A DNA stretch of 64,000 bases. It comes from Botryllus schlosseri. Its lineage: Eukaryota. Below the pieces are notes generated by a model that worked only from the letters and a program-made list of their open reading frames with translations, ran no database searches and was not told where the DNA came from. The DNA lies in contig CM119384.1 in NCBI GenBank assembly GCA_051294905.1, forward strand, positions 4,030,001 to 4,094,000. Direction: 5' to 3'. Below are positions 4,501 through 39,151 of the stretch, piece by piece (position 1 is the stretch's first letter; each line of letters begins with the position of its first letter). The translations under genes were made by a program, and so were the position numbers.

Positions 4501-4833
4501 AAATCCCCAGAAAAATTCCGGAAGAAAGTGGTGAAAAAGGTAGTCAGAAAGAAAAAGACAGATGGCGAGGAGGATTGTCACGAGTCACCCGATCATGATG
4601 AAAACTGCGATCCCGAAGACGAAAAATGCGGAGAATCGCCCGAAAAGGGCCGGAAGAAAGTGGTGAAAAAGGCCGTTAAAAAGATAAAGGCAGACGATGA
4701 GGACGATTGTCACGACTCGCCCGAGCACGACGAAAATTGCGAACCTGAAAGTCGCGAAGGGTTTCGGGCGTCCAGAAGAAAAACGGTCCGCAAAAAAGGG
4801 GCGAGGCGGCCACCTCCCCCGCCGGAGCATTAG
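1535..4833 (+). CDS. Terminal coding exon (~1099 codons, phase-1 acceptor) of an upstream gene; acidic low-complexity protein with polybasic repeats; family unknown
   Basis: Open frame from polypyrimidine acceptor ttctcaaccag|AT (AG 1533-34) to TAG 4831-33. The track's GTG start at 1573 is internal. AT-rich 3'UTR-like sequence with AATAAA follows. Confidence 0.85.
3595..4730 (+). repeat. Coding tandem repeat: SPEKGR(R/K)KVVKKVVKKIK modules with acidic His/Cys spacers
   Basis: Seven near-canonical copies plus one variant are readable in the translation. Confidence 0.9.
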
Positions 4834-15042: not shown

Positions 15043-15152
15043 ATGAGTTTGAAGATCGATGTTTCGTTCCTTACTCCCGAGGAGGACGCTGTCATATTGG
15101 CCGTCTTGCGGAGAGATGAAGCAATAAGAAAAGTTGAAGAAACGAGAGTCAA
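15043..15152 (+). CDS. Coding exon 1 of Slp/Slac2-family Rab effector: SHD1 helix (MSLKIDVSFLTPEEDAVILAVLRRDEAIRKVEETRV)
   Basis: Matches the DLSFLTEEE..ILxVLxRD..L+..EE.R+ pattern of synaptotagmin-like/exophilin N-termini; ccATG context; donor gtaagc, phase 2. Confidence 0.88.
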
Positions 15153-16904: not shown

Positions 16905-17071
16905 ACGACTGCGAAGAAAGTCTGAGGGTGGCAATGAAAAACAAATGCTCCGAACAAGAATATTTACCGGGGAGTGGATCGAACAACTAACTGCTCCAGG
17001 CCGAAGAGTTGTAAAGAGTATAAGTGAAGCACTTCATAAGGTCATCACAGTAAAGACCACCACTGTGACAA
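16905..17071 (+). CDS. Coding exon 2: SHD2 (..RLRRKSEGGNEKQMLRTRIFTGEWIEQL..), no zinc finger
   Basis: Acceptor ctctcacag completes the phase-2 codon AA|A; TGEW matches the SHD2 (S/T)GxW motif; donor gtaaga, phase 1. Confidence 0.85.
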
Positions 17072-18645: not shown

Positions 18646-18696
18646 CCACTGAATTAATCGTTAATGATGGCAGAGGAGCCAGGGGCTTCGAGCGAG
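18646..18696 (+). CDS. Phase 1-1 micro-exon (51 nt; TTELIVNDGRGARGFER)
   Basis: tatttcag acceptor, gtgagt donor, open frame. Confidence 0.7.
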
Positions 18697-19626: not shown

Positions 19627-19677
19627 AGCTCGAAACGGAATCTCGTGGTTTGGATTTTCGGCATCATTATCACACCG
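19627..19677 (+). CDS. Phase 1-1 micro-exon (51 nt; ELETESRGLDFRHHYHT)
   Basis: gcaccag acceptor, gtaagt donor, open frame. Confidence 0.7.
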
Positions 19678-19743: not shown

Positions 19744-19803
19744 AAACTACTTCGCACACAGTGACTGGGGAAGATGATCATATAACGCATAATGTTACCG
19801 ATA
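19744..19803 (+). CDS. Phase 1-1 micro-exon (60 nt; ETTSHTVTGEDDHITHNVTD)
   Basis: tctctatatag acceptor, gtaagt donor, 66-nt upstream intron. Confidence 0.7.
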
Positions 19804-20381
19804 GTAAGTAAGTAGGGACGTAATCAGATGTGGTTCGTAAGAAATATTCGAATATTTGAGTGGATCATCTACGTTTGTCCCACTTTTGCCTTCTTGGTAT
19901 CGAACTATTAACATTATCCACCCTGTACCCGACAAAGTTCATGCAATTTTAAAAATTATCCGGCATGCATTGTATTAACTGGTATTTTCAAGCTTGGAAT
20001 AATTTTAGAACCTTATATTCTGGATCTGCTCCTTATAGAGCACCAGTATTTTTACCTTCAGTTGAGTAACATTTGTAGTGATAATTGTACTTCTAATTGT
20101 TTAGTATTATCAACTAGTTTGACAATGAATCGGTAAATAATATTTGCTTAAATGACGTAGGCCTAATATGTGCAGGCTTGTGTGATATACAACGTACGAA
20201 GTGTGTCGGATGCACTCTCAAAAGTAACTGCATCAATACAATAATCGAATAAATCATAAGTGAAATAAATAAATATGTTTTTGCATGGTAATATGAGTAA
20301 CTCAAATGGAAGCTGTGGTAGATTAGAGAGGACCTTTGCGAGATGTGACACAAATATACTCTCAAGATCTCCTAATCCTAG

Positions 20382-20456
20382 ATAGCTCCATGGTAGTTTC
20401 TGATGAAGGAGGTGAATCACGGGCTCCTAGAAGCCACAGATCTACAGGCAATGGGG
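20382..20456 (+). CDS. Phase 1-1 micro-exon (75 nt; xSSMVVSDEGGESRAPRSHRSTGNG)
   Basis: atcctag acceptor, gtaagt donor, open frame. Confidence 0.7.
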
Positions 20457-20603
20457 GTAAGTACATTATACATTTTGATGACGTGTTAGTATCATGTCAG
20501 CAACAAACTCTTATGCTTGAATTCATAACATATATACTAATTTCAAAATTGATGGACAACAACTAATGTAGTATTAGTGACAACACAATTCCTCTTGGTA
20601 CAG

Positions 20604-20636
20604 AAGACATTGAAGCTCGAGGGGTTTTGATAGATG
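20604..20636 (+). CDS. Phase 1-1 micro-exon (33 nt; EDIEARGVLID)
   Basis: ttcctcttggtacag acceptor, gtaagt donor. Confidence 0.65.
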
Positions 20637-20842
20637 GTAAGTTTGCCAGTATTTTGTTTGCAAAACTGTGCTTGGGCGCCGATTGATATTTGTGGCATAA
20701 TTTAAATATTAATGAATGGAGTTCAATTTTGCGATTGCATTAATTTGTAGTGCGGTGTCTATGACGAGTTAACGGTGTGTGTAATTAATTATGTTCAATT
20801 AAATTTCACGATTAAATGCATTTAAACTACCTTTTGTCTTAG

Positions 20843-20893
20843 CGGAAATGGCGATACACGACGATATAGTATTTGATGCAAACACTATAACAG
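20843..20893 (+). CDS. Phase 1-1 micro-exon (51 nt; AEMAIHDDIVFDANTIT)
   Basis: cttttgtcttag acceptor, gtaatg donor, open frame. Confidence 0.62.
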
Positions 20894-21759
20894 GTAATGG
20901 CGAATTATTCATTGCCTAAGTAATATGGGTGAGCACAACGAATCCGAGTCTAAGATAAATTGGATGTATTAGATTCGTATCGCATTATCAAAATATTTAT
21001 CGCAAGGCAACGCACATTTATGAAACGATATTTCAGCGGTTGACCCGCTGCATCGTCGCAAAGCGCGATGCAGTGATCACGGTCAAGAAGTACAAAATTA
21101 TTTTTATGACGCGTATACGGCACCTTGTGGTCGCCAATACTTTCCAAATGATTCTTGCTGCTATAACGTCATAGTGATTGCTGCTCGGAATACTCGACTC
21201 TACTCAGAAACCAATCAATGAAGAACTCGATTTTCCCAATCCATACTTATTAAAGCATAACCCAGTTATCATAAATTGTAAGTTGAGTCAGTGCTGAAGT
21301 GTCTCACTAATGTTTGTAGGCCTCCACCGGTACTCCATTCCCAAATCCCGTAAGAGTCCAAATTGCGACTCTGACTTCAACACCATGTAATTTCATATAG
21401 CGACTCTCTAAACTATAAATTGAACGACTCAGCAGACTTCCGGCTCATCAGTTTTCAAGGTGGAGATGTGGTTCTTAACCTTTAATGACCTGGGGAACAC
21501 TTACTCTAATCTACAAGCCTTTGGGAACTCCAAATTTTTGCTGAGTCATGAATACAAAAATTGACCACAATACACATCTGACACATTATGATGCACAAAA
21601 TGAACTGTGCATTAACAGAGTGTGAAAGAACAAGACCATTAGAATATGATTTTCACATAAAACGAAAACATTATGAATATTTATTGCATATCAGTACTAC
21701 TCATATTGTTCTCTTTCTGATAATAGTTCCTGATATCTAGAAAAATGCTGTGTTGCTCA

Positions 21760-22255
21760 ACTTGACTCGAGTCATTTTCTCAAAATATGGACATGACTCG
21801 ACTAGACTTGAGTCAATCTGTGTATTGACTCGACTTGTACTCCAGTCATTGCGCATATGACTCGAGACTAGGACGGCCAAGACCGACGTTTCATTGTAAT
21901 TTCGAAGAATAGTAAATTGGTATTTCGTCTATTTTAGTACTGGTATTTGAAAATGCGACCAGAAACTGTTAAAAGTGAGAAAAATCTGTATACTATCAAT
22001 GCGAAACATTCCATATCACCAAGCAGCGCTGTTAAAAATGGGTTTCATAAGACTTCAACTCGAAACTGAACAGTCAACACAATGACTTGGACTCGAGTCA
22101 TAACGCTACGACTAGGACTCGACCCTCTGCTCGACGACTTGCACTTGACTTGACTCGGTGGTGAATTGAAAATATCTCGACTTGACTCGAGTCAAAACTA
22201 TAAAATTGAGATTGACTTATGACTCGGAACCTTTGTGGACTTGGATACAACCCTG
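21760..22255. mobile_element. gactcgagtc-rich hAT-like MITE
   Basis: Ends gacttggatacaaccctg; collinear with 61177-61639. Confidence 0.7.
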
Positions 22256-22523
22256 TTAAGAATAACGTCGTTAGGTTATCGAGTCAGCACCACCATTTTA
22301 TCCTCTCCACGCAATCCCACTGCATGTGCTAACCTTCTAGCAGGGAATCCGTTAGTACCAGTATCACTAGCAAGTCTCTAATCTGGGCTGACCAGGGTTC
22401 AAACGTACGGCTGAGAAGCTGACATTCTAAGTCTATATGCCACTACGCTATATCTTCGGCTGTCACTTCCTTGAATAAACCCAATGTCAGTATCTAGTTT
22501 TAAACCTATGTTTATATGTGCAG

Positions 22524-22571
22524 AGGAGTTGGATATAGTTGAAACTGAAACCGTTAGTAGAATGCCAAAAG
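22524..22571 (+). CDS. Phase 1-1 micro-exon (48 nt; EELDIVETETVSRMPK)
   Basis: atgtgcag acceptor, gtaaga donor, open frame. Confidence 0.68.
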
Positions 22572-22875
22572 GTAAGAACACTCTTAAAGTAATAGAGATA
22601 TATTCTATCGGTTTGAAATCGTCTAAGATCTTTCTCAATATACACGTGACCTTGTGGCCTTTTCTAGCTAAGTAACAGAGTTGAGTGCCGAGTAAACTTA
22701 TGATGCGTCTGTAAAGGTAGGCATTATAACCTATTTCCAAAGTGTATCTTACATCCGATAATGAAATTAATAAATTCAAGCATGAGAGTTTGTTGCTATC
22801 AGTGATTGGCGTATATGCATAACATGAAATTTCCAATTTGCTTTATTGCGCATTAAAAATTGAATTTGATTACAG

Positions 22876-22917
22876 CTACATTTAGTGCTGGTATGCATAA
22901 TCACAGGAGTGGTGATG
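22876..22917 (+). CDS. Phase 1-1 micro-exon (42 nt; ATFSAGMHNHRSGD)
   Basis: tttgattacag acceptor, gtaagt donor, open frame. Confidence 0.62.
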
Positions 22918-23155
22918 GTAAGTCTAATTCAAGTTATCTTGATTATTTAAATCCGTCACCGGCACTCATCTAGAAAAAATGTTATACAAAGTATGATGTA
23001 TATGACTTTGGTCATTGTGAATAGTGCAAATATTTTTTTGATTTTGGACTGCGCGTCAATAATTCTGGCCAATTCAAATAATATTACTGTATCGACCGTT
23101 CTTTTGAATGAATGCGCCGTTCGTTTCATGTCTAAAGACATACTTATTTGTATAG

Positions 23156-23200
23156 ATCATATCCATGCCAATGTTGAATCTCATGGTCGAAAATCAGTGG
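23156..23200 (+). CDS. Phase 1-1 micro-exon (45 nt; DHIHANVESHGRKSV)
   Basis: ttatttgtatag acceptor, gtaaga donor, open frame. Confidence 0.68.
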
Positions 23201-23910
23201 GTAAGACAATCTGGATATGCTCTCGAGGCACTCAATGGGTGGAATAGGTTTTAGGGTAGTGCACATTATGGTGCCCACGCACGCAAGAGTGTGGATATGC
23301 ATGCCATACGTTTTAAGAAGAATTTATATTATACAAGTATTTGAATGTGCAATTGTGCATTGATGATTTGATTTAGTAAATGCAACTTACAGTTATAACT
23401 AAATGGCTAAGCTCGACAAAACCATAGGTATATTTGTAATGTGTTAATGTGTATTGAGTAGGCCTATACTTATGCGTGTGGATCAGGTAAGCACGGTTAG
23501 ATTGCGTTAATTTTTAGTAAGCATCGATCCAAAAACAGTGAAGGATGTGGCATTTTCAAACTTGTTATTAAAAGTTCGCATAATCCTGGGACCAACAACA
23601 TGAAATATCGAGATTCATTCTAAATATGTATAACCCGATCACGATGGGCTCAACTGATTTCCGATTATACTTTTGGAATCATTTTTTTGACTGCATATTT
23701 TATACCATAGGCTTTGTAAGTAGCTACAGAACTTCAATATAGCAACAAACAAATTGTATTGCATACCAGTGTCTACCTTTTTATCTATTCCTAATCTAAA
23801 TAAATGTTGCCTACGACTGCTTGTTTGCGTTTAGTAGCCTGCTGTTTTTTATTTCACGCATCGTCCTTTTCATTTCTCATTACCAAGACGTTAAACTTGT
23901 TCTGACACAG

Positions 23911-26900
23911 GATCAGAGCTAATACATCAGTCAACGGTGACATCGGATTCACCCGCAGAAGCGCTTCAGACTACATCATCGAACTCTTTGCAAAATGAAC
24001 TTCACGACAGGGTCTTGCTAGAAAGCAGTCTCGAAGACGACCTTGCTGATGTTGGAAGTGATGAAGTTTCAGGTCCGGATCATAGCATGAAAAAGATGGA
24101 TATAATAGATTGGATGAAAACAGATTTGGCGTTGGCAATGGAAAGTGCAGTGACTGCGAAAAAACGACGGAAAAGACAAGCTATCAAGGAAGAAGTTATC
24201 ATCCCTGCAAAGGCGCATGATCAACACGAGCAACCTGCCGCACAGATAGCAGATGCGGAACAAGCAAAGAATACACTAGCAAGCCATATGGCAGATGATT
24301 TACAAGCTAATTCAGAGCAAGAATCGCCAAAATATACCGGTCATAACGCGGATATCGAATCAGACGTAGTGCCGGTTAAAGCACAAAAAATCCAAGTAGG
24401 CTTAAATGTAAATGAACTTTTCCTGGAGAAAGCAGCAGACAAGGCTTCTATATATGAAGATAAACCAAGTGAAAATGTCTCAATGGCAGAAGAGACTGGT
24501 CCGGACGCAAATTCTACTGAAAATCTGACAGTTAACACTGTAACCTGTAGCTCATCTTCAGACCAACTCATAGCAGAATGTTCAGAGTCGCAAGATCACG
24601 ACGAAGATATCGCAAAGCAGTCTCCAGAAGCTGTGGCTGGAGAGGAACCTGATATAATCGATCATGTAACTGAAGCATCTGAAATTTCGCATCAGGGCAC
24701 ACATGATGAAAATTTGTGTGCCGACAATGCTGCATCCGCAGAACACCTCTCTTTGCCGGATAAGGAGAGCAGCAGACTATCCAGCGCATCCGACGATAGC
24801 TCGATTGGTGAGGATCAAATGTCTCTGATGCAATTTCTCGAGTCTTTGCCTTCCGCCAAGGCTTTGCGTTCACCTCGTGGGCATCCTAGTCCAAGATTGA
24901 GCAGGCAGATCTCCATCGATTCAATTACAAGCAACGACGCCGTCGTGAATTTACTCGAAGATATGGTCACGAAAGTTGAGGATAACGCTTCCATATCGGC
25001 TGCTGTCGATTCAGCTGTCAGAAAAATAGACGAAACAAATGAGGAGTTTGAGAATTATCCAGCATCGAACATGATATTACCTGAAACTGAAATTTCAGAA
25101 AGCAACGTTGAGCCATCAGCCGCACAGGATGCCTCCAACAGCGTACTTGAAAAAGACAATAAGTCATCAATTGAGGTAAAGGAAATGGAAGAAACAATGA
25201 CATCAATACACGTAAGCGATGTGATGAACCAAATGGAAGGAAATTATGAAACTGAATCTGACAAACAGGATGTTAAAATCGTAGTTGACCATGATTTGCG
25301 TGAAGTATCCGAAAACAAAGATTTACATCAAAAGTGTGGGGACATTAGTAGCTCTGCTGCTGCCGATTCTGGCGTTACTGTTCTTCCATCACCAACAAAC
25401 ACAGATGTGGATAATACAACAACGTCCGACACTGCTAACAGAGATGCAGCTGGCGACAATGTTTCCTTACATTCATTCGAAACTGATGCATTCGCTACAA
25501 CTCAAATTGAATTGGATTCATCGGGAGACGCGGCAACAGCGGAAGAGGGTGTTTTATTCGCAGAGACTGGACGTGTAGAAAATGTGATTGATTATGACGC
25601 AACTGTGGACTATTCTCCTAAACAAACTGTCGATGAAATCGCAGTCGCTTCGGAATTATATCCCGATTCGGATTCGAATGACGGCGCGCCTTTTGAACTC
25701 GAAGATATCGCTAGTTCTATTGATAGCTATGGAAGCTCAAATCCGTCTGCGTATGCCGACTCGTATTTGAGATATGACGAGCTTCTGAACGTGAGCAATG
25801 CCGGCATTTTGCAAGACCCAGAACACATACCCACGATATTGATCACCGATTATGACGAAGATCTCTCGGAAATGACATTGACGAGATATGTGCGACAAAG
25901 CGAAAGCTGGAGTTCTGATTTGTACATTAGCGACGAGGATGAGGTGGAATATAACAGAGAAAGCTCCTGGTCTCGAGATGATACTGAAGATACTGTTAAA
26001 GACGAGGAAACTGTCGATTCGCTACCAGATTCATTACGGCAGTCATCCAGGAATAGCGATTTCATCGATGCCTCAGATTTTCACAGCGTGCCCGACAGTG
26101 AGAATGATTCATCGCACATACCATACGATATTCAAGCAGAATCGTTCACAAAGAACGAGGAAAATATCGATTACACCGAAACACCGCAAAGTGCAGATCA
26201 ATGTACGCGTTCACAGGATTCGCACGTTGAAGATACAACTCCTGTATCTGAAGAATATGATGCAGACGTTGAACAACTGGAGGCAGATATTGAACAAAGT
26301 GTTGATTCACCCGAAGAGCCAAGTGTGATTGATGATGCAGACGCAAGCGAACCAGTTTTTATGCTTGGAAACAATCATTACGTCTCCTACAATGTGGACG
26401 AGGATGATGAAATCGTGATGTATCCTCAGGACTCTTCAAACGTGCCTGATTCACCCATGAATTTTGTACGGAATCTGTATCCAATTGAGGAAGAACATGA
26501 ACCAGACGAGAACCAAACGAGTTTTAAGGAAAACGAGAATCCAGTAGCAGACAACTCGCAAAGTGAGCCATATTATGAAGAGTCAGTCACCGCATATACT
26601 CCTGGCGATAGCCAACGTGGTAAGGAAGGTATGTCAGTAGATGACCAAACACTCAAAGAGAGGTCAATCGATGATATATCACAGAGTAACGTTACTGACA
26701 ATAATGTGATTGAGTCAGTCGTAACATCAGATGCTGTGGGTGGTGGAGATAATAACATGGAAACAGTAAAGTCAGTTGATGGTGAAATGCATAAAATCTC
26801 TACAATTCACGATGTGGAAGTCAAAACTCCACAAGTGGATATTGAGCAAGCGGATGAACAGTCCCTTACCGAACAAACGTCTTTGACTTCACTAAGCGAC

Positions 26901-29900
26901 GAAATACCGCCAGACGATGTGAAAACACAAGCTGATGAAGGAACCACGTTACCTGTTACTGAAGCAGTAGATCCCGTTTCTGTTTGTGACACGACGAAAA
27001 CAAAATTCAGTGTAACCGATGAATTGGAGGATGAAGTCAATATAGGACATTCACAGGCTGATTCACCGTTAGAATCTGTTAAGGAAATCCACGCCGCTAC
27101 TCATGGACAAGAGTTGGAACTTCTAACAGGAGATGAGCTATCACCGACTCAAGAAAACAATTTGAATGAACCAATTCAACAAGAGTCGATAGATCACGAA
27201 GAACATCATAGTGATCCAGACTTTAAAGAAAATGATTCGGACCGTAACACGAAATCTTTGGGTGAATTGATGTTAACGAATACAGAGATTTTCACCGGTG
27301 ATGTAGCTATTCATGCTGAAAAGGGGGTGGTGATTCAAACCCCTGCAGACGAATCAGATGTTGAAACACAAGGAGCAGAACGAACTCATGATATTGAAAT
27401 TGATGGATCGATTTCAAAACATACTTCTGACAATTCCGCAATTGTGACTGTATTACAAACGATAGAACACACTGAAAGCTCAAGTTCCAGAGTAACAGAC
27501 ACGTTGGATTCAGCTGTGCCTCATTCTCTAAATGAAGCAGATAAAGATCCAGAGAAGCTAGAAGAGCAGGTCAATTTCTCGGGATCAACCATTTGGTATG
27601 TGGACGCAATGCATGGTATGAATGAAAACGCAGAAGCACAAAGCTCAGACTTTGTTCTGCCAGATGTCTCAAAGGAGACAATACCTCCAGGCCATGACAT
27701 CGAACAAACAGAGGAAATCAGCGCATCAGAAATGATTGAAAATCAACTGAGCACCGTTACTGATACAAATGAAACACTAAGTAGCAAATTAGCATCGCCT
27801 GATTCTGAATCAGTTGAGAAAGTGACTTTGTATGACATATATCCTGTGGATGCCGAATCAACAATAGATTCTCAAACTGCCAATATTCATGAAGTTGACT
27901 CTCAGAGCAAGAATGTTGATCCAGGGCAGAACGTCGAAGATTCTATTGCATATTCCAGTATGCCAGGTATTGTTCCTCTTGTCTTGTCAACAAACACCCA
28001 GTTTGAGAGTAATCAGCAAACACAAGATACCTTCGCGGACACTGTGCAAAATTCGGAATATCATGAGGATTGTTTTAGAGATGACGAAGTTCAGAAAACA
28101 GTAGCTCCTCAATTTGATCCAGATGGGATTGAGGAAGCAAGCATCGAAATTGGTGGAGCTTCATATAAACAGCCACTGTCATCAACTGACTTTGCCACCA
28201 AGTCACTGATTGAAGAGTTCTCTGAACAGGCGGTGGCGCACGTTGAGTCCAATGTATGTGAAATGTCTGACACATCCACACTTTCAACTGAAGAGACTAT
28301 TACACGGGTTTTGGCTGAAGAGAAAATGCAAGTATCCGAAATGGCTGATACATCAGCACAGTTAGTTGATGAATCCACTGAAAAGTCCTTGACTCAACTT
28401 CAATCGGAAGTCTCTGCTAAGGCTATTACTAATAAGTCCGCCGAACCGGCACGGACTCAAATTGAATCAGAAGTCTCTGAAGTGGCTGATTCCTCCTCAC
28501 CTCTACTTGAAGAATTCACTGAACATGCCTTGACTCAAGATGAATCACATAAATTTGAATTGACTGATGCACACGCGTCGCTAGCGGAAGAGTTCAGTAA
28601 AGAGTCAAAGACTCGAGATGAATCCGAAGTGACTGACATGGCTGATAGATCTATGTCACTGATTGAAGAGTCTGGTGAACAGTCTTCGATTCAAAATGAA
28701 TCACCTAAATCTGAAATTGCGGATAGCTCCAGACCATTGACTGAAGAGTCCACTGAAAAGGTGCAGACTCAACTTGAATCAGAAGTCTCTGAAGTGACTG
28801 ATTCGTCCACCCCACTAACGGAAGAGTCTACTGAAAAGAATTTAACGCAAGAAGAATCACATTTATCTGAAATGGTTGATGCACCCACGCCACCACGAAC
28901 TGAGAAGTTTACTGAACATGATTTGAATCAAGATGAATCACATAGATTCACTCCATTGACTGAAGATTCCACTGAACATGCTTCGACGCAAGTTAAATCA
29001 CATATACCTGAAATATCTGATAAATTTATTTCACGAACTGAAGCGTTCACTGAAGAGGCACGACATCCAGTTGAATCCAAAGTTTCTGAATTAACTGATC
29101 CATCCACACCACCTATTGAAGAGTTGATTGCACAGGTATTGACTCCAGAGGAATCACACGTAGCTGAAATGGATGACACATCCACGCCACAAACTGGGGA
29201 GTCCAGTGAAGAGGTACAGAATCATGATGAATCCAAAGTCTCCGATATGGCTGTTATATTCACGCCATTGATTGAAGATTCCACAGAGCAAGCTTTCGCT
29301 GAAGTTGAACCGGATATATCCGAAATGGGTGATACACTCATACCAAAATCAGAAGAGTGCACGGATGAGACACACACTCAAGTTGAATCCAAAGTCATTG
29401 AGATGACTTTTACGCCCATACCTTCAACTGAAGAATTTCCCGAAGGGGCACAGACTCCAGTCGAATCCAAAGTCCCAGATATGCCCGATACATTCACGCC
29501 ACTAATCGAAGAGTCCGCTGAACACACGCTAAAGCAAGATGAACCAGGGGAATCCGCAATCGATGATGCACCGAGGCTATTAATTGGTCAGTCCGCTGAC
29601 CAGCCTTTGAATCGTGATGAATCAAAGACATTGGATATATCTGATGATGAATCACCAAAGTCATCGATTTCCCCTAGAAGGAAAACAGTGAAAAAGAAAA
29701 AGGCAATGACTGACAAATCTCAGGATATAACAAAGAAGTCGTTGAGAAGGAAAGTTATTAGGAAATCTTTGAAGGATCAAGAAACTACGATCACGGATGA
29801 TCCTGAAACATTAATCAGCACTCATCAAGCATCTCCTGGTACGAATGCTGAACTAAACGAGAACAAAACTCAGGAATATGACACGGAAAAAATGGTGCAA

Positions 29901-32900
29901 GTCGATCTCACGAATGCAACAAAGACTGACACTGCTGTCAAGCTGGCCAAAAGGAAAACCATTAAGAAAAAGAAGGGTAAAGACGAGTCACAAATCAGCC
30001 TATCTAAGAAGAAGATCATAAAGCGCAAGATTCAGAACGAAAGCTCACCTGGAGAACAGGCCTTATTTGCACCTGGATCGACAGAGCAAGCTTCATTTGA
30101 TGGCGAACCAAATGTGCATGCAAGTGATATTTCTGCACCTGAAATCGTTGATACATCAATGCCAGCAAATCAAGAGTCCATTGTGCAAGCTTTGATTCAA
30201 GATGAATTGAAAGTGTCTGAAATGACTTATACATCTGAACCACCAATCGAAGAGCTCAGTGAACACGCACTGCCTCAAGTTGAATCCCAAGTCTCTGAAA
30301 TGATGGCTGTTGTATCCACGTCACTGATTGAAGAGTCTACTGAACAGGTCTTATCATCTCAAGATGAATCGCATATATCTGAAAATGCAGATACATCCAC
30401 GCTACCAATTGAAGAGGCACGGTTTCGAGTAGAATCCGAAGTGACTGATTCATCCACGCTACCAATTGAAGAGGCACGGTTTCGAGTAGAATCCGAAGTG
30501 ACTGATTCATCCACGCCACTGATTGAAGAGTCTGTTAAACAGGCCACAACCCAAGACGAATTGCATATATCTGAAATTGCTGAGTCTGAGTCTACTGAAC
30601 AGGCATTGACTCAAGATCAGTCGCATGTATCTGAAAGGGCTGATATATCCACGCCATCTACTGAAGTGTCTACTGAACAAGCTTCGACTCAAGATGAATC
30701 GCACATATCTGAAATAGCTGATACAATGATTAAAGAATCCATTGAACAAGCCTCGACTCAAGATGAATCGCATGTGTCTGAAAATGCTCGTTCATTCATG
30801 CCGCCACCTTTTGAGTCTAATGAACAGACATCGAATCGTGATGAACTGCATGTATATGATATAGCTGATACATCCGTACCAGTGATTGGAGAGTCCGCCA
30901 AACAGGCATTGACTCAAGATGAATCACATCTATCTGAAATGTTTGATATATCCACGCCACCAACGAAAGAGTCTACTGAACAGAACTTGGCTCAAGATGA
31001 ATTCCATAAGTCCGAAAATGCTGATACAACCACGTCACTGATTAAAGAGTGTATTGAACAGGCCTTGACTCAAGATGAATCGCATATATCTGAAAACGCT
31101 GATAGGACATCCCCGCCCCCTACTAAAGGGTGTACTGAACAAGCTTCGACTGAAGCTGAATCGCGCATATCTGAAATAGCTGATTCATCCACACCACTGG
31201 GTGAAGAGTACGCCAAACGGGCTACGACTCAAGAAGATGAATCGCATATATCTGGAACTGCTGATACATCCACGCAACAAACTGAAGAGGCACAGACTCC
31301 AGTTAAGCCTGAAGTTGCTGATTCATCCACACCACCGATTGAAGCATCCATTGAACAAACCTCGACTCAAGATGAATCGCATGTGTCTGAAAATGCTCAT
31401 TCATTCGTGCCACCAACTGTTGAGTCTACTAAACAGGCATCGAATCATGATGAACTGCATGTATATGATATAGATGATACATCCGTACCAGTGATTGGAG
31501 AGTCCGCCGAACAGGCATTGACTCAAGATGAATCACATCTATCTGAAATGTTCGATATATCCACGCCTCCAGCGGAAGAGTCTACTGAACAGAACTTGGC
31601 TCAAGATGAATTCTATACGTCCGAAAATGCTGATACAACCACGTCACTGATTGATGAGGCTACTGAACAGGCCTTGACTCAAGATGAATCGCATATATCT
31701 GAAAAGGCTGATATATCCACGCCACCACCTACTGAAGGGTCTAGTGAACAAGCTTCGACTGAAACTGAATCGCACATATCTGAAATAGCTGATTCACCCA
31801 CACCACTGGTTGAAGAGTACGCCAAACGGGCCACGACTCAAGATGGATCGCATATATCTGGAACTGCTGATACATCCACGCAACAAACTGAAGAGGCACA
31901 GACTCCAGTTGAGTCTGAAGTTGCTGATTCTTCCACACCACTGAGTGAAGCATCCATTGAACAAACCTCGACTCAAGATGAATCGCATGTATCTGAAAAT
32001 GCTCGTTCATTCATGCCGCCAACTGTTGAGTCTACCGAACAGGCATCGCATTATGATGAACTGCATGTATATGATATAGCTGATACATCCGCACCAGTGA
32101 TTGGTGAGTCCACCGAACAGGCGTTGACTCAAGATGAATCACTTATATCTGAAATGTTTGATATATACACGCCCCCAACGGAAGAGTCTACTGAACAGAA
32201 CTTGGCATACGCGCCACAAACTGAAGAGGCACAGACTCCAGTTGAATCTGAAGTTGCTGATTCATACACACCACTGATTGAAGAATCCATTGAACAAGCC
32301 TCGACTCTAGAGAATTTGCATATATCTGAAAATGCTGATACAATTACTGCACCGACGGAAGAGTCCACTGAGCAGGCCTTGACTCAAGATGAATTGCACA
32401 TATCTGAAAAGACTGATATATCCACCCCACCAACTGAAGAGTCTACTGTACAAGCTTTGGTTCAAGATGAGTCGCAAACATCTGATATAGCTGACACACC
32501 CACACCACTGATTGAAGAATCCATCGGACAGGCCCCGACTCAACATGAATGGTATATATCCGAAAAGGCTGATATATCCACCCCACCAACTGAAGAGTCT
32601 ACTGTACAAGTTTTGGTTCCAGATGAATTGCAAACATCTGAAATAACTGACACATCCACACCACTGATTGAAGAATCCATTGAACAGGCCTCGACTCACG
32701 ATGAATCGTTTATATCTGAAAAGACTGATGTATCCACCCCTTCGACTGGCGTGTCTAATGTACAAGCTTTGCTTCAAGATGAATCGCAAACATCTGAAAT
32801 AACTGATACATTCACACCACTGATTGATCAGTCCACTGAACAGGCCTTGAGCCAAGATGAATCGCATCTATCTGATAATGCTGAAGCATTCATCTCACCA

Positions 32901-35900
32901 ACTGGTGAGTTTACTGAACAGGTCTTGTCTCAAGATGATACATTCACGTCACAAACTGAAGAGGCACAGACTCCAGTTGAATCTGAAGTTGCTGATTCAT
33001 CCACACCGCTAATTGAAAAATCCTCCAAACATGCCTTGACTCCAGATGAATCTTATCTATCTGAGAATGTTGATACTTCGATGTCACCAACTGTTAAGTT
33101 TACGGAAGCGGCCTTGACTCAAGATGAATTGAATACATTTGATAATGCTGATGCAGCCAGCAAAATGGCTCAACATGAATCACTTACATCTGAACAGGCC
33201 GATACAGCCGCACAACAAACTGAAGAGTTCGCTGAAGAGGCGCAGACTCGACTGGAATCCAAAGTCTCTGATATGGATGATACACCTACGCCACATATTG
33301 AGGAGCCCACCAAACATGTGCTAATTCATGATGTACCACTCGAATCTGCAATGGATGATGCATCCAAGCTTATAATTGTCGAGTCCGGTGACAAATCGTT
33401 GAACAAAGATGAGTCAATGACATCAGAGATATCCAAGGCGAGAGAATCGGCTGATGAAGAATCGCCAAAGCCATCATCTCTCCCCAGAAGGATTACAATA
33501 AAAAAGAAAAAGACTACGACTGACAAACCACAGGATGTCACAAAGAAGTCGATCAGAAAGAAAATGATTAAGAAATCAGCAAACGATCAAGAAACTGCAA
33601 TCACAGATGATTCTGAAAACGTAATCAGCATTCATCAAGCATGTCCCGGTATGAATGCTGAACTAAATGAGAACAAAAGTCAGGAATATGAGTCGGAAGG
33701 AACCTTGCAAGTTGATCTCACGAATGCAACGAACACTGACACAGTGGCCAAGTTGGCCAAGAGGAAAACAATTAAGAAAAAGAAAGGTAAAGACGAGTCA
33801 CAATCCAGCACATCTAAGAAGAAGATCATCAAGCGCAAGAAAAATAACGAAAGTGCATCTTCACAGCAGGAATCATTTTCATCTGAATCCACAGAGCAAG
33901 CGTCATTGGATGGTGAGCCATATGTAAATGCAACTGATATATCTGTACCTGAAATGGCCGATGCATCAATGCCAGCAACTGAAGAGTCGATTGCACAACC
34001 TTTGACTGAAGATGAATTGCAAGTGTCTGGAATGACTGTTACATCAGCCCCAACAACTGAAGTGTCTACTGAACAGTCACAGCCTCAAGGTGAATCGAGG
34101 AGTTCTGAAATGCCTGATATATCCACGTCACTGATTGAAGATTCTACTGAACGGGACTTGACTCAAGATGAATCGCATATATCTGAATATGCTGATACAT
34201 CCACGCCACTCATTGTGGAGTCCACCGACAAGACCTTGAGTCAAGATGAGTCAGATATATTAGAAAAGGCTGATACATCCATACCACCAACTGGTGAGGC
34301 TACTGAACAGACTTTGACTCAAGATGAATTGCAGATTTCTGAAATAGCTGATAGATCCACGCCACTGGTTGAAGAGTCCGCCGAGCAGGACTTGACTCGA
34401 GATGAATCGCATATATGTGAATATGCTGATACATCCACGCCACCAACTAAAGAATTCACGGAAGAGATTGTGAACCAAGTTGAATCGCATGTAACTGAAA
34501 TTGAGGATACGAATACGGCAATGATTGGAGGGTCCATTGAACAAGTATTGACTATAGATGAACCACAAGCATCTGAAATGGCTGATACATCAACTCCAAC
34601 AATAGAAGAGTACTCGGAACGGGCTTTTTCCCAAGAGGATTCACAATTATCCGAAATAGCTGGTACGTATATATCTGCAACTGAAGAGTCCACTGAACAG
34701 GCTATGACTCAAGGCGAACCTCAAGCACATGAAATAACTGACACATCAGCTGTAACAACTCAAGAGTACTCGGAACATGCTTTGCCTCAACAGGATTCAC
34801 AATTAACTGAAATAAGCGATACATCCACACCTGCAACTGAAGACTCCGTGGACCAGGCTCTGATTCAAGATGAGATAAAGTCGTTGGAATCATCCAAAAC
34901 AACAGAGTCCACTGATGATACACCACAAAAGCCATCGCCAAGAAGAGTGACAATTAAAAAGAAGAAAACTGCAAGCACTAAACAACAGGATATCGCAAAG
35001 AAGTCGATCAGGCGAAAAGTTATAAAAAAATCGGCAAAAGACCAAAAAATTACAATCACAGAAGATTCCGAAATAGTAAGCAATCAAGAATCTTCATCAA
35101 GCAACGCCGAGTTAAACGAAAACACAATTCAAGGATGTGACTCGGATGGTAGTCAGCAAAGGCCCGAAATAGATGATACAATCGGACCAAGTTCTGACTC
35201 TACGTATAAGATGATCACTGAATGTGAACTGTCTATTCCGCCTGTAGAGGACAATGCATCGAATTGCGAATCGGCTATCGCTGACCCTCATCGTGAATTA
35301 GTAGCTGACGAAGGCCCTGGCGTACTTGATTCTGCGTCTGAATACGCAGGAGACGGACTGTTTACGTCTGATATACCCCAATCTCTGCCATTGTATTCAA
35401 CCGATCATGCCACAATGGCGAATGAAACACCGACATTAATTTTAACGTCTCCGTCAAACACAGAAACCGAAATAAAAGCCGAAGTTTCTATATTTGAAAA
35501 GAAAACCAAGAAGTCCAGAAGGAAGAGTCTGATTCGAAGGAGAATCTCCGGCGCAACAGACGAGACGTCAAGTAACGATGGTGTTCTCGAATCGTCGGAA
35601 GATAATCTATCAGATAAAGAGGGCTTTTCCTATTATTCAGCAGCAGAGGAACTCGAAAATCTATCAGAAAGCGGTGATGTCGCAGACCACAGCGTAGAAT
35701 TCGATACAGAAACACTTGCCGGTGATGCCGTAAAGGATGAAAATGAGTCCAAACCTGATACAATTGGTGGAGCCGCTTTGGAAGAGAAAGACTTGAATAT
35801 ATCAACGCCTGTAGTGGATCAAGCATCGGATGATGACCGATCTCAAACACAGGTGAAAAAAATTACAAAAAAGTCAAAGAAAACTGTCAAATCAGTCAAA

Positions 35901-37919
35901 AGAAAGGTGATCAAAAAGGTACAGCCCAAAGGAGATGACACTATTCAAACTGGAGAGCTGGCGGATGATCCGACAGTTCTAGAATCAAGCGTGACAGATG
36001 ACACTGTATCACATGATATGCCATCTTCACACGCGATCGAGAATACAGAGGTAGCAAGTCAAGAACAGTCCGAATCAGACCGTGCTGGTACGACACACGA
36101 AATCCACACGGATGACAAATGCGATGGAGAGAATAATGAATCAGGGGTTCGGACCGAACTGCCTCAGCGTAAAGTTAGGAGAAAGACCGTAAAGATGCGC
36201 AAACAAACTACGGACGGCTCCACAGACAAGAAGTCAGTCAAAAAGAGGGTGGTCAAAAAGATGCAACTAGTCAGCGATCAGACTACAGTAGAAGCGACCG
36301 ACATTGAAGTCCAACCCGATGCTAACACTCTCTCGAGTGAGCAAGTGATTCAAACTCGAGTGAATATCCAGGTTGATGACAATGAAGTAGGGGATGAAGG
36401 TTTTTCCATTGAAGACAGGGACAAACTATCTACCGAAGTTCAATCACAAATATCTGATGCTGTCACCGATTCTGATGGGTCATCTTCTCAATTTCAGTCA
36501 GTTTCAGAGGACCTGACTGTTGAGCACCAAAGCACAATCAATAGAGAGACAGTCTGCGACGATGAAATGAAACTTGTTACATCAGGCGTTTCTGTTGCAG
36601 CAGATGCAGCTGACACAAGCAGTGTCGTCAGTCCTGTGCCTTTTGACAATGCGTCGAGAAAAATCAAGAAGATCAAAAAGTCTTCCAGGAAAAAGGATGC
36701 TGAGAAAACACCTTCTATAAAAAGAGTTCCCAAACCGACAAACGCAAATGATCCAATCTCTACAGACTCCCACTCTCCCGTAATGAGTCCACACGCTATC
36801 GACGTGATTGAAAAGCCAGATTCAGACATACACGATTCCGTGTCAGAGGCTTCGGCAACTCACTCTGCGAGTGGCATTGATGCGCAATATGTGGAATCCG
36901 GTGTCGTAGCGCAATCCACGCCAGTTCAGTTCAAAACGAATGCTGAAATATGCGATTCAAGTACAGACGAACAGTCGAATCGCAGTATGTCCGTGACGAA
37001 AATATCCTCCAATGAAGTTGATCAAGATTTGGCAGCTAATACTCACGAACTAGAACAGGCGTGCGAGCCCATAGAAAGCATCGATGCTGCTGTAGAAGAG
37101 TTAGGATCTGCAGATAACATCACTTCCGAAACTGGTAATCAACCAGTGGAAGTGGAAGGCACTGCTCCAACCGAAATCTTCCAAGAAACACAGGATCGCG
37201 ATCAATCTTTGACAAACTTATCCTCGCCGACATATGATACTTCACTAGCTCGATCTTTAGAGAATGAAACAATTTATGAGGAATCAGCTGATGGTACACG
37301 GGCTAACAAGCATAACAGTGGCGAAGAATTTAATCCAATTGCAGAATCAAGCACAGGTCACGATTCTAACTCTCAAACTCCTTCAAAACCGGGCTACGCC
37401 GACAGCATCAGCGATCCTGTTACGGCAGATCACGAGATTTCGCCCGACCCGCCAAAAGTCAAGAAATCAATCAGAAAAATCAAGACGAAAAAGTCTAATC
37501 GAGAATCTGCTGCGGGAGGCGAAGTGGACGCTTCGACTCGTCCCAAATCAGCCAGAAGAAAGGTTATAAAAAAGGGCCCGAGAGACTCGCCTAAACTAGA
37601 CACGGAGTCAGCAGAAGTATCAGAATCTTCAAACGTTGAACATATCCCAGACAGCACTCATGTTGTTTTAGAGGGCGAATCACACGTAGAACAATCCGCA
37701 ATGTCACAAATCCCGGTTGACGAATCGGCACAGTTGAAACAAGAAGAGACGGCTACAACAGCGCCGGTGAAAGCGGTGAAAAAGGTCAAAAAATCGACAA
37801 ATAAGGTACCGGCTGACGCCGACAGCAAAGGCGATTCAAGTAAAAAGACGACTGTAAGACGAAAAGTGGTTAAAAAAGCACACAAGCCAGCCGATCCTGA
37901 GGGAGATGATAGGACGTGA
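23911..37919 (+). CDS. Giant ~14-kb coding exon of the Slp/Slac2-like gene; Glu/Ser/Thr/Asp-rich disordered region with repeats and polybasic islands
   Basis: Uninterrupted frame of ~4,669 codons from phase-1 acceptor ttctgacacag|GA. It ends at TGA 37917-19, which overlaps a possible donor ac|gtgaga at 37916. Confidence 0.9.
28250..34900 (+). repeat. Coding tandem array of ~78-nt/26-aa units (consensus ~TPLIEESTEQALTQDESHISEMADTS), roughly 70 units by length
   Basis: Repeated actcaagatgaatc / gagtctactgaacag motifs and repeated peptide in the translation. Confidence 0.9.
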
Positions 37920-38492
37920 GAATATTTCCCCATATACTACGTTAAACTATGCAAGCCGTTCGTTCTTATGACGTTCAAATTTGCCGACGTATCTCCGTGT
38001 TGTGATTTTTCATGCGTAAGATAATGCCGAACGAAAATGACGCGTTCCGCAAGCTCGCCGTGCGTTGCGGAACGAACAATGAGCATACAGTGCCAGTTTC
38101 TCTTTTTACAGCGTACTATCTACTCCAAATTTCCAATGCTGTCTTACATCGGCTTATTCGCGCGGGCCGGATCGAAAAATTCATCACAAATAGTATGAAT
38201 TCGACTCAACCAAAAATAACAAAAATCTGGCCAACATCCACTCCGGATCTGCCTTAATCGTGCACACCACTCGCTGGTGCAGGCCAATAGACACTTCAAC
38301 TACACTACGACTTCTCCACATCGATGCAGCATTTCGCCGAGCCTGTCAGCGTTATAAATTACGTCGAAGATTGTTGCGGGTGTAAGTGCAAGGTTTGGAG
38401 GTAACTGCACGAATGCATGCGGGTGATAGGGCTTTGTAAGATATCAGTAAAAGCCAGACAGCATGAAATTAAACTCGAAGCGTATTTTTCAG

Positions 38493-39151
38493 GAGCTACA
38501 AAAGACATTGGCCAAAGCGTCGGCTTTCCCGATAGCTTTTTCTTCCCGATCAAAAGCATCCACGAGAATTTTTTCTTCCCGCTGAAATCCGAGCCGGTCG
38601 GGCAGGAGATACAAAACGAATTCCACTTCCCAATACTCATCCCTTCCAAAGATCCTGTGGATCCGAGTAGGAGATACATATCCAGGTCTGAAATCAGTGA
38701 ATTCTTCGGTGGAAAATCCGGCTCAGTAGGGGTCAATATTGAAGAAAAACTCACAGTGTCAACCGCGTCTAAAGAACCGTCTTCTCCGTCTAAAAAGAAA
38801 ACCTTGTTCGGGAAAATCATTAACATTTTCTCGAACGAATCGCAGTCACCGGAACACGAAACAGTAATAGTAGCAGAGGCGCAAAATCAAAGCGTACAAT
38901 CGGGATTGAAAGCTATAGCGGAGATTGTACTGGAAGAGGAAGCCACGCAGCAGCAACCAGTCAAAACAAACGGCGAGAATCTCGTAGAGGAAATAATGAA
39001 TATAGCCACTGGAAACCAGGATAGTCACCCGTCTATTGTCGTGAGCGCGCCGGACCAAGGCGTGAAATCTTCTGTGCAGGAAATTCAAATCGATTCGGTA
39101 CGCGTGGATAAGGTCGGTCAGAGTAGCGATGCGGTTATGGTCAAAATTTGA
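38493..39151 (+). CDS. Short alternative last exon (phase-1 acceptor, ~219 codons) of the Slp/Slac2-like gene
   Basis: Acceptor tatttttcag|GA in the same phase as the giant exon; acidic composition; stop TGA 39149-51; AT-rich 3'UTR-like sequence follows. Confidence 0.65.

What the first reader, a model, noticed from the sequence alone, without database searches (positions are those of the whole stretch)
23911..37919. 14-kb single exon making a ~4,900-aa Rab-effector with an almost entirely disordered acidic body
Summing the exons (733 + 14,009 nt) gives 4,913 aa. Vertebrate SYTL2 and EXPH5 have unusually large exons (recalled), but this one is several-fold larger and repeat-built. A small vesicle-binding head on a very long polyanionic chain suggests a long-range tether or steric spacer for secretory granules or lysosome-related organelles (inference). 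This is the strongest candidate here for an undescribed system.
Basis: partly seen in the sequence, partly recalled or inferred. Interest (0 to 1): 0.78.

Follow-up and report, generated by a model that had tools for sequence, protein, structure and literature searches.

The report
Giant acidic tail on Rab-effector gene
A real, transcribed 14-kb exon in this animal genome (earlier notes of this scan say a colonial sea squirt) adds about 4,670 disordered, strongly acidic residues to a small head resembling those that bind Rab27-type vesicle GTPases. That would be a roughly 530-kDa relative of exophilin-5, and its function is untested.

Summary
One frame is open from 23895 to 37919 with no stop, against 138-563 stops in the other five frames.

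RNA contigs from two studies splice the Slp-homology-domain (SHD) exons through five phase-1 micro-exons into 23911. Every joint is GT..AG. The supported isoform is 4,854 aa rather than 4,913, about 531 kDa, with net charge about -647.

Both halves of the exon are present in those RNA runs at the level expected for full coverage. Contiguity past the first 1.4 kb was not shown.

The body has no Pfam family, no homologue in any search and no confidently folded region. About 70 copies of a 26-aa acidic unit in three blocks, split by three K-rich modules, make up its central half.

New here: an upstream tandem paralogue (gene A) has the same exon phases and the same plan, with an SHD, a disordered terminal exon, RRKVVKK-type motifs and no C2. 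Gene A has 661-704-aa orthologues in other species' transcriptomes.

I read gene B, the gene with the 14-kb exon, as a lineage-expanded, C2-less Slp-type effector, close in plan to Slac2-b/exophilin-5. Rab binding, translation and the tether or spacer role are inferred. It is a new variant of a known kind. This scan had noted the same stretch before.

The parts
15043..15152 (+). Gene B coding exon 1 (ATG at 15043; 110 nt, ends in phase 2). Encodes the SHD1 helix MSLKIDVSFLTPEEDAVILAVLRRDEAIRKVEETRV.
   Evidence: With this exon as query, the seven best PDB hits are Slp2-a/Rab27A fusions, melanophilin or Slp2 (best E 0.0035). Pfam FYVE_2 positions 2-29, E 0.005, below the cut-off. The donor is CAA|gtaagc. 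The 298 nt of the X1 contig that lie upstream of 18646 are as long as exon 2 (167 nt) plus 131 nt of exon 1; only their last 30 letters were shown, and those match the end of exon 2.
16905..17071 (+). Gene B exon 2 (167 nt, ends in phase 1). Encodes the SHD2 region with TGEWIEQLTAPGRR.
   Evidence: A loose end of X1 just before 18646 reads the last 30 nt of this exon. It aligns to SHD2 of the paralogue family. There is no Cys-rich zinc-finger insert.
18646..18696 (+). Micro-exon, 51 nt, phase 1-1
   Evidence: GT..AG joints in RNA contigs of X1 and X5
19627..19677 (+). Micro-exon, 51 nt, phase 1-1
   Evidence: GT..AG joints in X1 and X5
19744..19803 (+). Micro-exon, 60 nt, phase 1-1
   Evidence: GT..AG joints in X1 and X5
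20382..20456 (+). Micro-exon, 75 nt, phase 1-1
   Evidence: GT..AG joints in X1 and X5
22876..22917 (+). Micro-exon, 42 nt, phase 1-1, joined directly to 23911
   Evidence: Joint 22916/7 to 23910/1, GT..AG, in X1 and X5
20604..23200 (+). Span holding four further candidate phase-1 micro-exons (20604-20636, 20843-20893, 22524-22571, 23156-23200). They are not in the RNA contigs seen and may be alternative.
   Evidence: Good AG/GT sites and lengths that are multiples of 3. They are skipped in the X1 and X5 contigs.
23911..37919 (+). Giant exon, 14,009 nt to the TGA, or 14,005 nt if the GTGAGA donor at 37916 is used
   Evidence: Open frame. Spliced acceptor. Runs X1-X4 and X25-X27 (one study) hold 0.68-0.80 and run X5 holds 0.63-0.75 of its sampled 31-letter words. 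It matches nothing else in its own genome.
23913..28202 (+). Unique acidic N-terminal part of the body (isoform aa 187-1616)
   Evidence: No Pfam family (first 1,000 codons scanned). For its first 1,199 aa: no homologue among 1.84 billion representative proteins and AF2 mean pLDDT 32.3 with no residue at 70 or more.
28203..29639 (+). 26-aa acidic repeat block 1 (consensus about DTSTPLIEESTEQALTQDESHISEIA)
   Evidence: Iterated hmmsearch finds 79 domains, about 70 of them good copies
29649..30053 (+). K-rich module 1 (SPRRKTVKKKK ... KKSLRRKVIRKS ... KLAKRKTIKKKKGKDES ... KKKIIKRK)
30150..33431 (+). 26-aa acidic repeat block 2, with 156-nt and about 600-nt higher-order repeats
   Evidence: TRF periods of 78 and 156 nt. 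hmmsearch. Ka/Ks of internal duplicates 0.67-1.34.
33468..33866 (+). K-rich module 2, a duplicate of module 1
   Evidence: Alignment. 68% identical, Ka/Ks 0.45.
33960..34874 (+). 26-aa acidic repeat block 3
34923..35054 (+). K-rich module 3, matching only the first half of modules 1 and 2
35055..37916 (+). Unique C-terminal part with about 7 further basic patches. It ends ...TTVRRKVVKKAHKPADPEGDDRT.
   Evidence: AF2 on the last 1,200 aa gives mean pLDDT 33.8. No homologue.
37916..37921 (+). GTGAGA donor overlapping the TGA stop
   Evidence: Read from the sequence. There is no poly(A) signal between 37919 and the 38492 acceptor apart from ATTAAA at 38468. Use of this donor was not tested.
38493..39151 (+). 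Probable shared last exon. After the giant exon it would add 13 codons and then stop. If the giant exon is skipped (phase 1) it encodes 218 aa, giving a 404-aa isoform.
   Evidence: Frame logic and a tttttcag acceptor. Poly(A) signals at 39359 and 39687. No RNA test was done.
1535..4833 (+). Terminal big exon of the tandem paralogue, gene A (1,098 aa, phase-1 acceptor, 10 RRKVVKK-type motifs). Its SHD exons lie upstream of the window at L012:5670-5779 and L012:8030-8178.
   Evidence: Orthologues P0001 and P0002.

Best explanation
Gene B, the gene holding the 14-kb exon (window 15043 to about 39151, + strand), is a C2-less member of the Slp/Slac2 (exophilin) family of Rab27/Rab3/Rab8-type effectors. 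It is the larger of two tandem paralogues.

Its linker exon has grown to 14 kb in two ways. A 78-nt (26-aa) acidic unit was amplified in tandem to about 70 copies. A K-rich module of about 130-180 aa was duplicated segmentally to give three copies.

Shown here: the exon is real, it is transcribed, it is spliced to the SHD exons, the head is homologous to SHDs, and the body is orphan, disorder-like and strongly acidic.

Inferred: the roughly 531-kDa product is recruited to secretory vesicles or lysosome-related organelles when its N-terminal SHD binds a GTP-loaded Rab. The polyanionic chain (net charge about -650, contour length about 1.7 um) acts as an extended, self-repelling spacer. The 11-12 interspersed [RK][RK]K[VIT][VI]KK patches are the only tail feature shared with gene A and its orthologues, and they are the candidate second attachment site, for acidic lipids or the cytoskeleton. 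On this reading the protein tethers or spaces vesicles over long distances.
For: - Open frame: 0 stops against about 277 expected.
- Spliced RNA contigs from two studies link exon 2, five micro-exons and 23911.
- The word shares of 0.63-0.80 over 23911-33900 and 33901-37919 match what full coverage would give at the 0.75-1.1% sequence difference seen in the contigs, namely 0.70-0.79.
- SHD1: with exon 1 as query, the seven best PDB hits are Slp2-a/Rab27A fusions, melanophilin or Slp2 (E 0.0035-0.27). Pfam FYVE_2 matches at the right profile positions.
- A profile built from gene A, P0001 and P0002 matches gene B residues 5-87, across both SHD exons, at 27.8 bits and E 1e-10.
- Genes A and B have the same 110-nt first exon and the same phases, and their SHDs align at z = 8.9 over shuffles.
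- Gene A orthologues are full-length 661-704-aa proteins with an SHD, a disordered middle, RKKVVKK motifs, a C-terminal RRKTVRKK and no C2.
- The motif occurs 10 times in A and 11 times in B, and lies close to the C-terminus of all four proteins, among the last 10-20 residues.
- Disorder: all 90 windows of 200 aa fall on the disordered side of the charge-hydropathy line. AF2 gives no residue with pLDDT of 70 or more in 2,399 residues.
- No C2 exons were found, and a glypican gene follows.
Against: - No test of Rab binding was possible. The SHD scores stay below Pfam's cut-off (17.4 bits against 27.2).
- The aromatic residue after the SHD2 tryptophan is Ile (TGEWI instead of WF or WY).
- There is no protein-level evidence.
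- Contiguity of the whole 14 kb in one molecule is not shown. Contigs were laid only over the first 0.5 kb, and one extends 1.4 kb.
- A bulk RNA-seq run (X24) had no reads on the exons in the 6% of the run that was sampled, so expression is restricted.
- Similarity of the tails of A and B is at motif level only. It is not statistically significant as an alignment.
- K-rich patches also look like nuclear localisation signals.
- Weak sequence constraint fits a spacer but equally fits near-neutral drift. Ka/Ks is 0.45-1.3, and 5 of 8 SNPs are non-synonymous.
Confidence: 0.55

Rival explanations
1. The main product of the gene is the short isoform of about 400 aa (SHD, micro-exons and the 38493-39148 exon). 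The 14-kb exon is then an optional cassette included only in a few cell types. This does not exclude the best explanation but shifts where the function lies.
For: All upstream exons and the 38493 exon are phase-1 compatible, so skipping keeps a 404-aa frame. X24 shows no expression of the giant form.
Against: The only spliced contigs seen, in X1 and X5, go from 22917 into 23911. No joint or loose end pointing elsewhere was listed. The skip junction lies outside the stretch that could be laid, so it was not tested.
Confidence: 0.2
2. The head no longer works as a Rab binder. The protein would then be an acidic-basic scaffold unrelated to vesicles, for example nuclear or nucleolar, with the K-rich patches acting as nuclear localisation signals and the acidic arrays binding basic partners.
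For: The patches (PRRKTVKKKK, KRKTIKKKKGK) look like classical NLSs. SHD2 has WI instead of WF or WY. SHD scores are modest.
Against: All SHD1 consensus positions are kept. The head aligns over both SHD exons with a paralogue family that is conserved between species. Exon phases are conserved, which argues for a maintained head.
Confidence: 0.15
3. The exon is transcribed but not translated as one protein, and the frame is open by accident of its repeat structure.
For: There is no proteomic evidence. Amino-acid constraint is weak.
Against: The frame has 0 stops in 4,668 codons, including about 2,400 unique, non-repeat codons, against 138-563 stops in the other frames. The frame is continuous with the spliced SHD exons.
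Confidence: 0.03
4. It is a canonical synaptotagmin-like protein (SYTL2-type) whose C2 exons lie further downstream.
For: The SHD1 hits are best to Slp2-a.
Against: The giant isoform stops at 37917, or 13 codons into the next exon. No C2 hallmark motifs occur on the + strand in 37.9-47.8 kb. Glypican exons follow at about 47.9 kb (read by eye, no Pfam support) and at 55.1 kb (Pfam Glypican, E 1.6e-10). Full-length orthologues of paralogue A also end without C2.
Confidence: 0.02

Closest known systems
Slac2-b / exophilin-5 (EXPH5), a vertebrate Rab27 effector
   Same: An N-terminal SHD without zinc fingers, no C2 domains, and a long tail with no recognised domains carried mostly by one very large exon. 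All reported EXPH5 mutations from c.1395 to c.3650 lie in exon 6 (PMC4695416). The effector family and its structure are reviewed in PMC10511049.
   Different: The tail here is about 2.4 times longer (4,854 aa against 1,989 aa, the latter from my memory). It is strongly acidic and half of it is a 26-aa tandem repeat. No sequence similarity to any protein was found for the tail. Orthology was not tested. The gene sits between an MCM gene and a glypican gene.
Slp2-a (SYTL2) SHD, solved with Rab27A
   Same: It is the best sequence match to SHD1 of both gene B and gene A. SHD1 and SHD2 lie side by side with no zinc-finger insert.
   Different: Slp2-a ends in tandem C2 domains that bind plasma-membrane lipids. 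There are none here. SHD2 reads TGEWI instead of SGQWF (the latter from my memory).
Gene A, the tandem paralogue upstream, and its orthologues P0001 and P0002
   Same: Same strand. Same 110-nt first exon, phase-2 then phase-1 introns, and a phase-1 big terminal exon. Homologous SHD. [RK][RK]K[VI][VI]KK motifs, including one close to the C-terminus.
   Different: Gene A is about 1,185 aa and its orthologues 661-704 aa. It has conserved islands between species, none of which is found in gene B. It lacks the 26-aa acidic repeat.
Other giant disordered exons, such as the giant ankyrin exon of chordates and other giant exons noted in this genome
   Same: A single multi-kb exon adds a long disordered segment to a small targeting module. 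Earlier notes of this scan list exons of 12.8 and 28 kb in the same genome (unchecked).
   Different: The gene families are unrelated, and here the anchor is a Rab-binding head.

Membership tests
Slp/Slac2 (exophilin) family | An N-terminal SHD1 helix with the (L/F)(T/S)xEE..I..V(L)xRD..L...E..R pattern at the very start of the protein | tested here: met
   With exon 1 as query, the seven best PDB hits are Slp2-a/Rab27A fusions, melanophilin or Slp2, aligned to residues 2-31 of those SHDs (E 0.0035-0.27). All pattern positions are kept. It starts at the initiator Met.
Slp/Slac2 (exophilin) family | An SHD2 segment with the (S/T)GxW(F/Y) motif a short distance after SHD1 | tested here: inconclusive
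   TGEWI sits 21 residues after the RV that ends SHD1. It aligns to TGDWL/TGDWV/TGEWL of gene A, P0001 and P0002. The aromatic residue after W is replaced by I, L or V in all these sequences. Exon 2 alone gives no PDB hit.
Slp/Slac2 (exophilin) family | A Pfam FYVE_2 (PF02318) score above the gathering cut-off | tested here: not met
   17.4 bits against 27.2 for exon 1. 20.1 bits for P0001:1-110. The model includes the zinc finger that this subfamily lacks, and the full spliced head could not be submitted by reference.
Slp/Slac2 (exophilin) family | GTP-dependent binding to Rab27, or to Rab3 or Rab8 | not testable with these tools
   Complex prediction needs unaltered contiguous sequences. The head and the species' Rab genes are split by introns, so no job was sent.
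Slp (SYTL1-5) subfamily | Tandem C2A-C2B domains at the C-terminus | tested here: not met
   No Pfam C2 in the first and last ~1,000 codons of the big exon; the middle ~2,700 codons were not scanned. No C2 hallmark motifs downstream. The protein stops at 37917, or 13 codons later. The next gene is a glypican.
Slac2-a/c (melanophilin, MyRIP) | Two zinc-finger motifs between SHD1 and SHD2 | tested here: not met
   There is no cysteine in residues 1-92 of the spliced head.
Slac2-b / EXPH5 (as orthologue) | Architecture: a zinc-finger-less SHD, a long domain-free tail in one large exon, and no C2 | tested here: met
Slac2-b / EXPH5 (as orthologue) | Detectable sequence similarity of the tail, or orthology shown by tree or synteny | tested here: not met
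   No protein of any species matched the tail. No tree or synteny test was done. I therefore call it EXPH5-like in plan, not an EXPH5 orthologue.

The most novel reading that the evidence does not exclude
A lineage-specific, half-megadalton polyanionic bristle anchored to vesicles by a Rab-binding head. On this reading the length of the acidic repeat array sets granule spacing or reach, and the interspersed basic patches give multivalent, charge-driven attachment or condensation. That would be a mode of Rab-effector action, by electrostatic and entropic spacing, not described for any exophilin.
Probability: 0.2. Interest if true: 0.75.

Novelty: new variant of a known kind. Interest (0 to 1): 0.5.

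Why it matters
If translated, this would be, to my knowledge, by far the largest effector of the Rab27/Rab3 type. It would also be a natural experiment in what a Rab effector's unstructured tail does. Two neighbouring paralogues keep the same head and the same short basic motif but differ fourfold in tail length and completely in tail sequence.

That contrast makes a testable case that the ends carry the specific contacts and the middle acts through length and charge. It also bears on exophilin-5, whose long tail is still functionally unexplained.

Tried and rejected
Searches for relatives of the body found nothing:
- Whole-exon protein search at 2,570-8,180 aa: nothing.
- First 1,199 aa against 1.84 billion representatives: nothing.
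- Last 999 aa: nothing.
- ESM Atlas for the body and for P0001: no usable hit.

Pfam on the first and last 1,000 residues of the body and on the 38495-39148 exon found nothing meaningful.

BLASTP of gene A's big exon against the giant exon found only low-complexity basic matches (E at least 0.2). A profile of the A family hits gene B only at the SHD. A profile of the A-family C-terminus gives scores near 0 on gene B, so the tail resemblance is a motif and not an alignment. BLASTP of the two 36-aa first exons returned nothing, although they are 15/36 identical without gaps.

I considered dense CK2-type phosphosites. The count is 196 [ST]xx[DE] sites against about 233 expected from composition, so they are not enriched and I dropped the idea.

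A C2 hallmark scan of 4.8-15 kb and 37.9-47.8 kb found nothing.

The repeat and the unique N-terminal part match nowhere else in the genome.

The spliced 92-aa head was not submitted to Pfam or the PDB search because it has no reference and I did not type it. Complex prediction was not sent, for lack of a contiguous Rab sequence.

Literature searches found nothing on such a gene in tunicates.
Full report
**Observation.** The window holds one reading frame open from 23895 to a TGA at 37917-37919, 4,674 codons. The coding frame has no stop. The other two + frames have 233 and 563 stops, the minus frames 138-227, and 200 shuffles give a mean of 277 and a minimum of 241. The exon is A-rich on the coding strand (AT skew 0.16-0.25).

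**Is it an exon of the SHD gene?** Yes. I used the single read-laying run on 18450-24440. A 1,981-nt contig of run X1 (depth 15.6) and contigs of run X5, from a different study, show these joints, all GT..AG:
- 18696 to 19627
- 19677 to 19744
- 19803 to 20382
- 20456 to 22876
- 22917 to 23911

The part of the X1 contig that precedes 18646 ends in ...TCATCACAGTAAAGACCACCACTGTGACAA. That is the 3' end of exon 2 at 17071. By length, the contig reaches about 21 nt upstream of the ATG at 15043 and about 1.4 kb into the giant exon.

Introns are uncovered apart from a high-copy repeat at 21,650-22,250 and a smaller one near 19,050-19,250, so X1 and X5 are cDNA. Joining exon 1 (15043-15152), exon 2 (16905-17071), the five micro-exons and 23911-37919 gives 14,565 nt in frame with one terminal stop. 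The product is 4,854 aa, 531 kDa, with net charge -647.

**Is the whole exon expressed?**
- Runs X1-X4 hold 0.68-0.70 of the sampled 31-letter words of 23911-33900.
- X1 and X25-X27 hold 0.78-0.80 of 33901-37919. X5 holds 0.63 and 0.75.
- The contigs differ from the reference at 0.75-1.1% of positions. At that difference, full coverage would leave 0.70-0.79 of words intact.
- So essentially all of the exon is in these small transcriptome assemblies of 10-18 Mb.
- This does not prove one continuous molecule, and internal splicing as a minor form is not excluded.
- A bulk RNA-seq run (X24, 6% read) had no read on any exon, so expression is restricted.

**The 3' end.** The TGA is part of a GTGAGA donor at 37916. 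There is no poly(A) signal before the strong acceptor at 38492 apart from an ATTAAA at 38468. Signals follow at 39359 and 39687. I think the giant exon is more likely penultimate (23911-37915). After it, the last exon would add 13 codons and stop. If the giant exon is skipped, the same exon reads in phase 1 for 218 aa, giving a 404-aa isoform. Neither junction was tested.

**The head.**
- Exon 1 (36 aa) searched against the PDB returns eight hits at E up to 10. The seven best are five Slp2-a/Rab27A fusion constructs (E 0.0035-0.0046), melanophilin (E 0.24) and Slp2 (E 0.27), aligned to the start of their SHDs. The eighth is an unrelated lipoprotein at E 0.41.
- Pfam FYVE_2 matches profile positions 2-29 at E 0.005, below its cut-off.
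- Exon 2 carries TGEWIEQLTAPGRR at the SHD2 position, and there is no cysteine in the first 92 residues. This is therefore the zinc-finger-less SHD type of Slp1, Slp2 and Slac2-b (family structure as in PMC10511049).
- Exon 2 alone has no PDB hit.

**A tandem paralogue (new).** The 1,116-codon open segment at 1483-4830 shares RRKVVKK-type motifs with the giant exon, so I fetched the 20 kb upstream. On the same strand I found:
- an SHD1 exon, MVVEISLDHLKEEEVEAILKVLERDAQIQKHEDARR (L012:5670-5779);
- an SHD2 exon...RTGDWLSDVATPARKKDKRGADIVRASIRKK (L012:8030-8178).

The first exon is 110 nt ending in phase 2, and the second ends in phase 1, exactly as in gene B. The big exon has a phase-1 acceptor at 1534/1535. 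The two first exons are 15/36 identical without gaps, and the two heads align at z = 8.9 over shuffles. Gene A's SHD1 also hits only Slp2-a chains in the PDB (E 0.02-0.05).

Gene A's big exon finds two proteins from other species' transcriptome assemblies:
- P0001 is 704 aa, a complete ORF on a 2,838-nt contig of SRR32906214.
- P0002 is 661 aa.
- P0001 has the full SHD; P0002 starts within it, lacking SHD1. Both have a disordered middle with a few conserved islands, RKKVVKK motifs and a C-terminal RRKTVR(K/R)K. Neither has a C2 domain.

A profile of these three heads matches gene B residues 5-87 at 27.8 bits and E 1e-10. Outside the head the family profile finds nothing in gene B.

The locus reads MCM gene, then gene A, then gene B, then glypican.

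**The body.**
- No Pfam family in its first and last ~1,000 residues; the middle ~2,700 residues were not scanned.
- No homologue in any of the three protein searches or the Atlas.
- No copy elsewhere in the 495.5-Mb genome.
- Composition: S+T 23%, D+E 21.5%, K+R 7.7%, and F+W+Y+C 3.3%.
- All 90 windows of 200 aa lie on the disordered side of the charge-hydropathy boundary.
- AF2 without an alignment gives mean pLDDT 32.3 and 33.8 for the first 1,199 and the last 1,200 residues. No residue reaches 70, and only five short helices are predicted. Single-sequence AF2 is a weak test, but it agrees.

**Architecture of the body.**
- A unique acidic N-terminal part (aa 187-1616).
- About 70 copies of a 26-aa unit, DTSTPLIEESTEQALTQDESHISEIA, in three blocks (aa 1617-2095, 2266-3359, 3536-3840).
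- K-rich modules separating the blocks. Modules 1 and 2 are 68% identical, and module 3 matches their first half.
- A unique C-terminal part with about seven more basic patches, ending TTVRRKVVKKAHKPADPEGDDRT.

Internal duplicates have Ka/Ks of 0.67-1.34 in the acidic repeats and 0.45 in the K-rich modules. Of eight SNPs seen in the RNA contigs, five are non-synonymous. Amino-acid identity is therefore weakly constrained, while the frame and the composition are kept.

**Mechanism.** The following are shown: a head homologous to Rab-binding SHDs, a spliced and expressed 14-kb exon, an orphan disorder-like polyanionic body, and one short basic-hydrophobic motif. That motif is shared with a paralogue family in which it is conserved between species, and it lies close to the C-terminus in all four proteins.

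The rest is inferred. The head would bring the protein to a GTP-Rab on secretory or lysosome-related vesicles. The basic patches would provide a second, multivalent contact, with acidic lipids or the cytoskeleton, in place of the C2 domains of true Slps. The acidic arrays would act through length and charge as a spacer or long tether, with a contour length of about 1.7 um.

Which Rab, which organelle and which cell type are unknown.

**Comparison and novelty.** The plan is that of Slac2-b/exophilin-5: a zinc-finger-less SHD, no C2, and a long featureless tail in one big exon (PMC4695416 places mutations c.1395-c.3650 all in exon 6). I do not call it an EXPH5 orthologue, because no tail similarity was found and neither a tree nor synteny was tested. 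It is not a SYTL, since the C2 test failed. It is not melanophilin or MyRIP, since it has no zinc fingers.

It is a new variant of a known kind. The new elements are the size, the acidic 26-aa repeat and the contrast between the two paralogues.

**Species.** Earlier notes of this scan name the genome as Botryllus schlosseri. I did not verify that.

Noticed in passing
window 1535-4833; L012:5670-5779 and L012:8030-8178 (G000:C14:4025670-4028178): Tandem paralogue, gene A. It has an SHD, a 1,098-aa disordered terminal exon with a 192-nt repeat encoding SPEKGRKKVVKKVVKKIK..., and no C2. Orthologues P0001 and P0002 exist in other species' transcriptomes. P0001 has about 20 residues (KKWKKEEDTLQKIDEYADTD) between SHD2 and the big exon, so gene A probably has a micro-exon too.
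   Followed up: partly
window 21650-22250: A high-copy repeat inside the intron, full of GACTCGAGTC-type palindromes. It has very high depth in the RNA runs (up to about 10,800 in X5) and many rearranged joints. It is probably an expressed MITE-like transposon family. A second, smaller repeat lies near 19050-19250.
   Followed up: no
window 38493-39148: The probable last exon, read in phase 1, encodes 218 aa with repeated FFFP/FHFP motifs (DSFFFPIKS, NFFFPLKS, EFHFPILIPS). No Pfam family matches. It would be translated only if the giant exon is skipped.
   Followed up: partly
window 47761-48141 and 55069-55365; L011 (G000:C14:4012000-4018300): Flanking genes on the same strand. A glypican lies downstream (Pfam Glypican E 1.6e-10; a signal-peptide exon at about 47.9 kb). 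An MCM helicase lies upstream (MCM P-loop E 3.5e-20, MCM_OB E 3.8e-9). From memory, MCM7 and GPC2 are neighbours on human 7q22, so this could be old synteny into which the SHD gene pair is inserted.
   Followed up: no
window 15016-15042: A good acceptor (ttctgcttctcttcag|CGCAAAGACACC) lies 12 nt before the ATG. By length, the X1 contig reaches about 9 nt beyond it. This could be a spliced-leader trans-splice site or a short upstream exon.
   Followed up: no
G000:C1:38102193, C2:12071187-12071523, C9:19884950, C10:21491211: Other loci of the FYVE_2/SHD type in the genome. One has a melanophilin/MyRIP-like start (MGRKLDLGELTEEEEKTILNVIQRDYDVRRVE) and one has an SGAWFY rabphilin/RIM-type exon. 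Dozens of ORFs of about 327 aa also match FYVE_2 positions 46-110 weakly, which suggests a repeated zinc-finger gene or element.
   Followed up: no
window 262-851: Three short tandem arrays (periods 28, 24 and 64 nt) at the left edge of the window, upstream of gene A's big exon.
   Followed up: no
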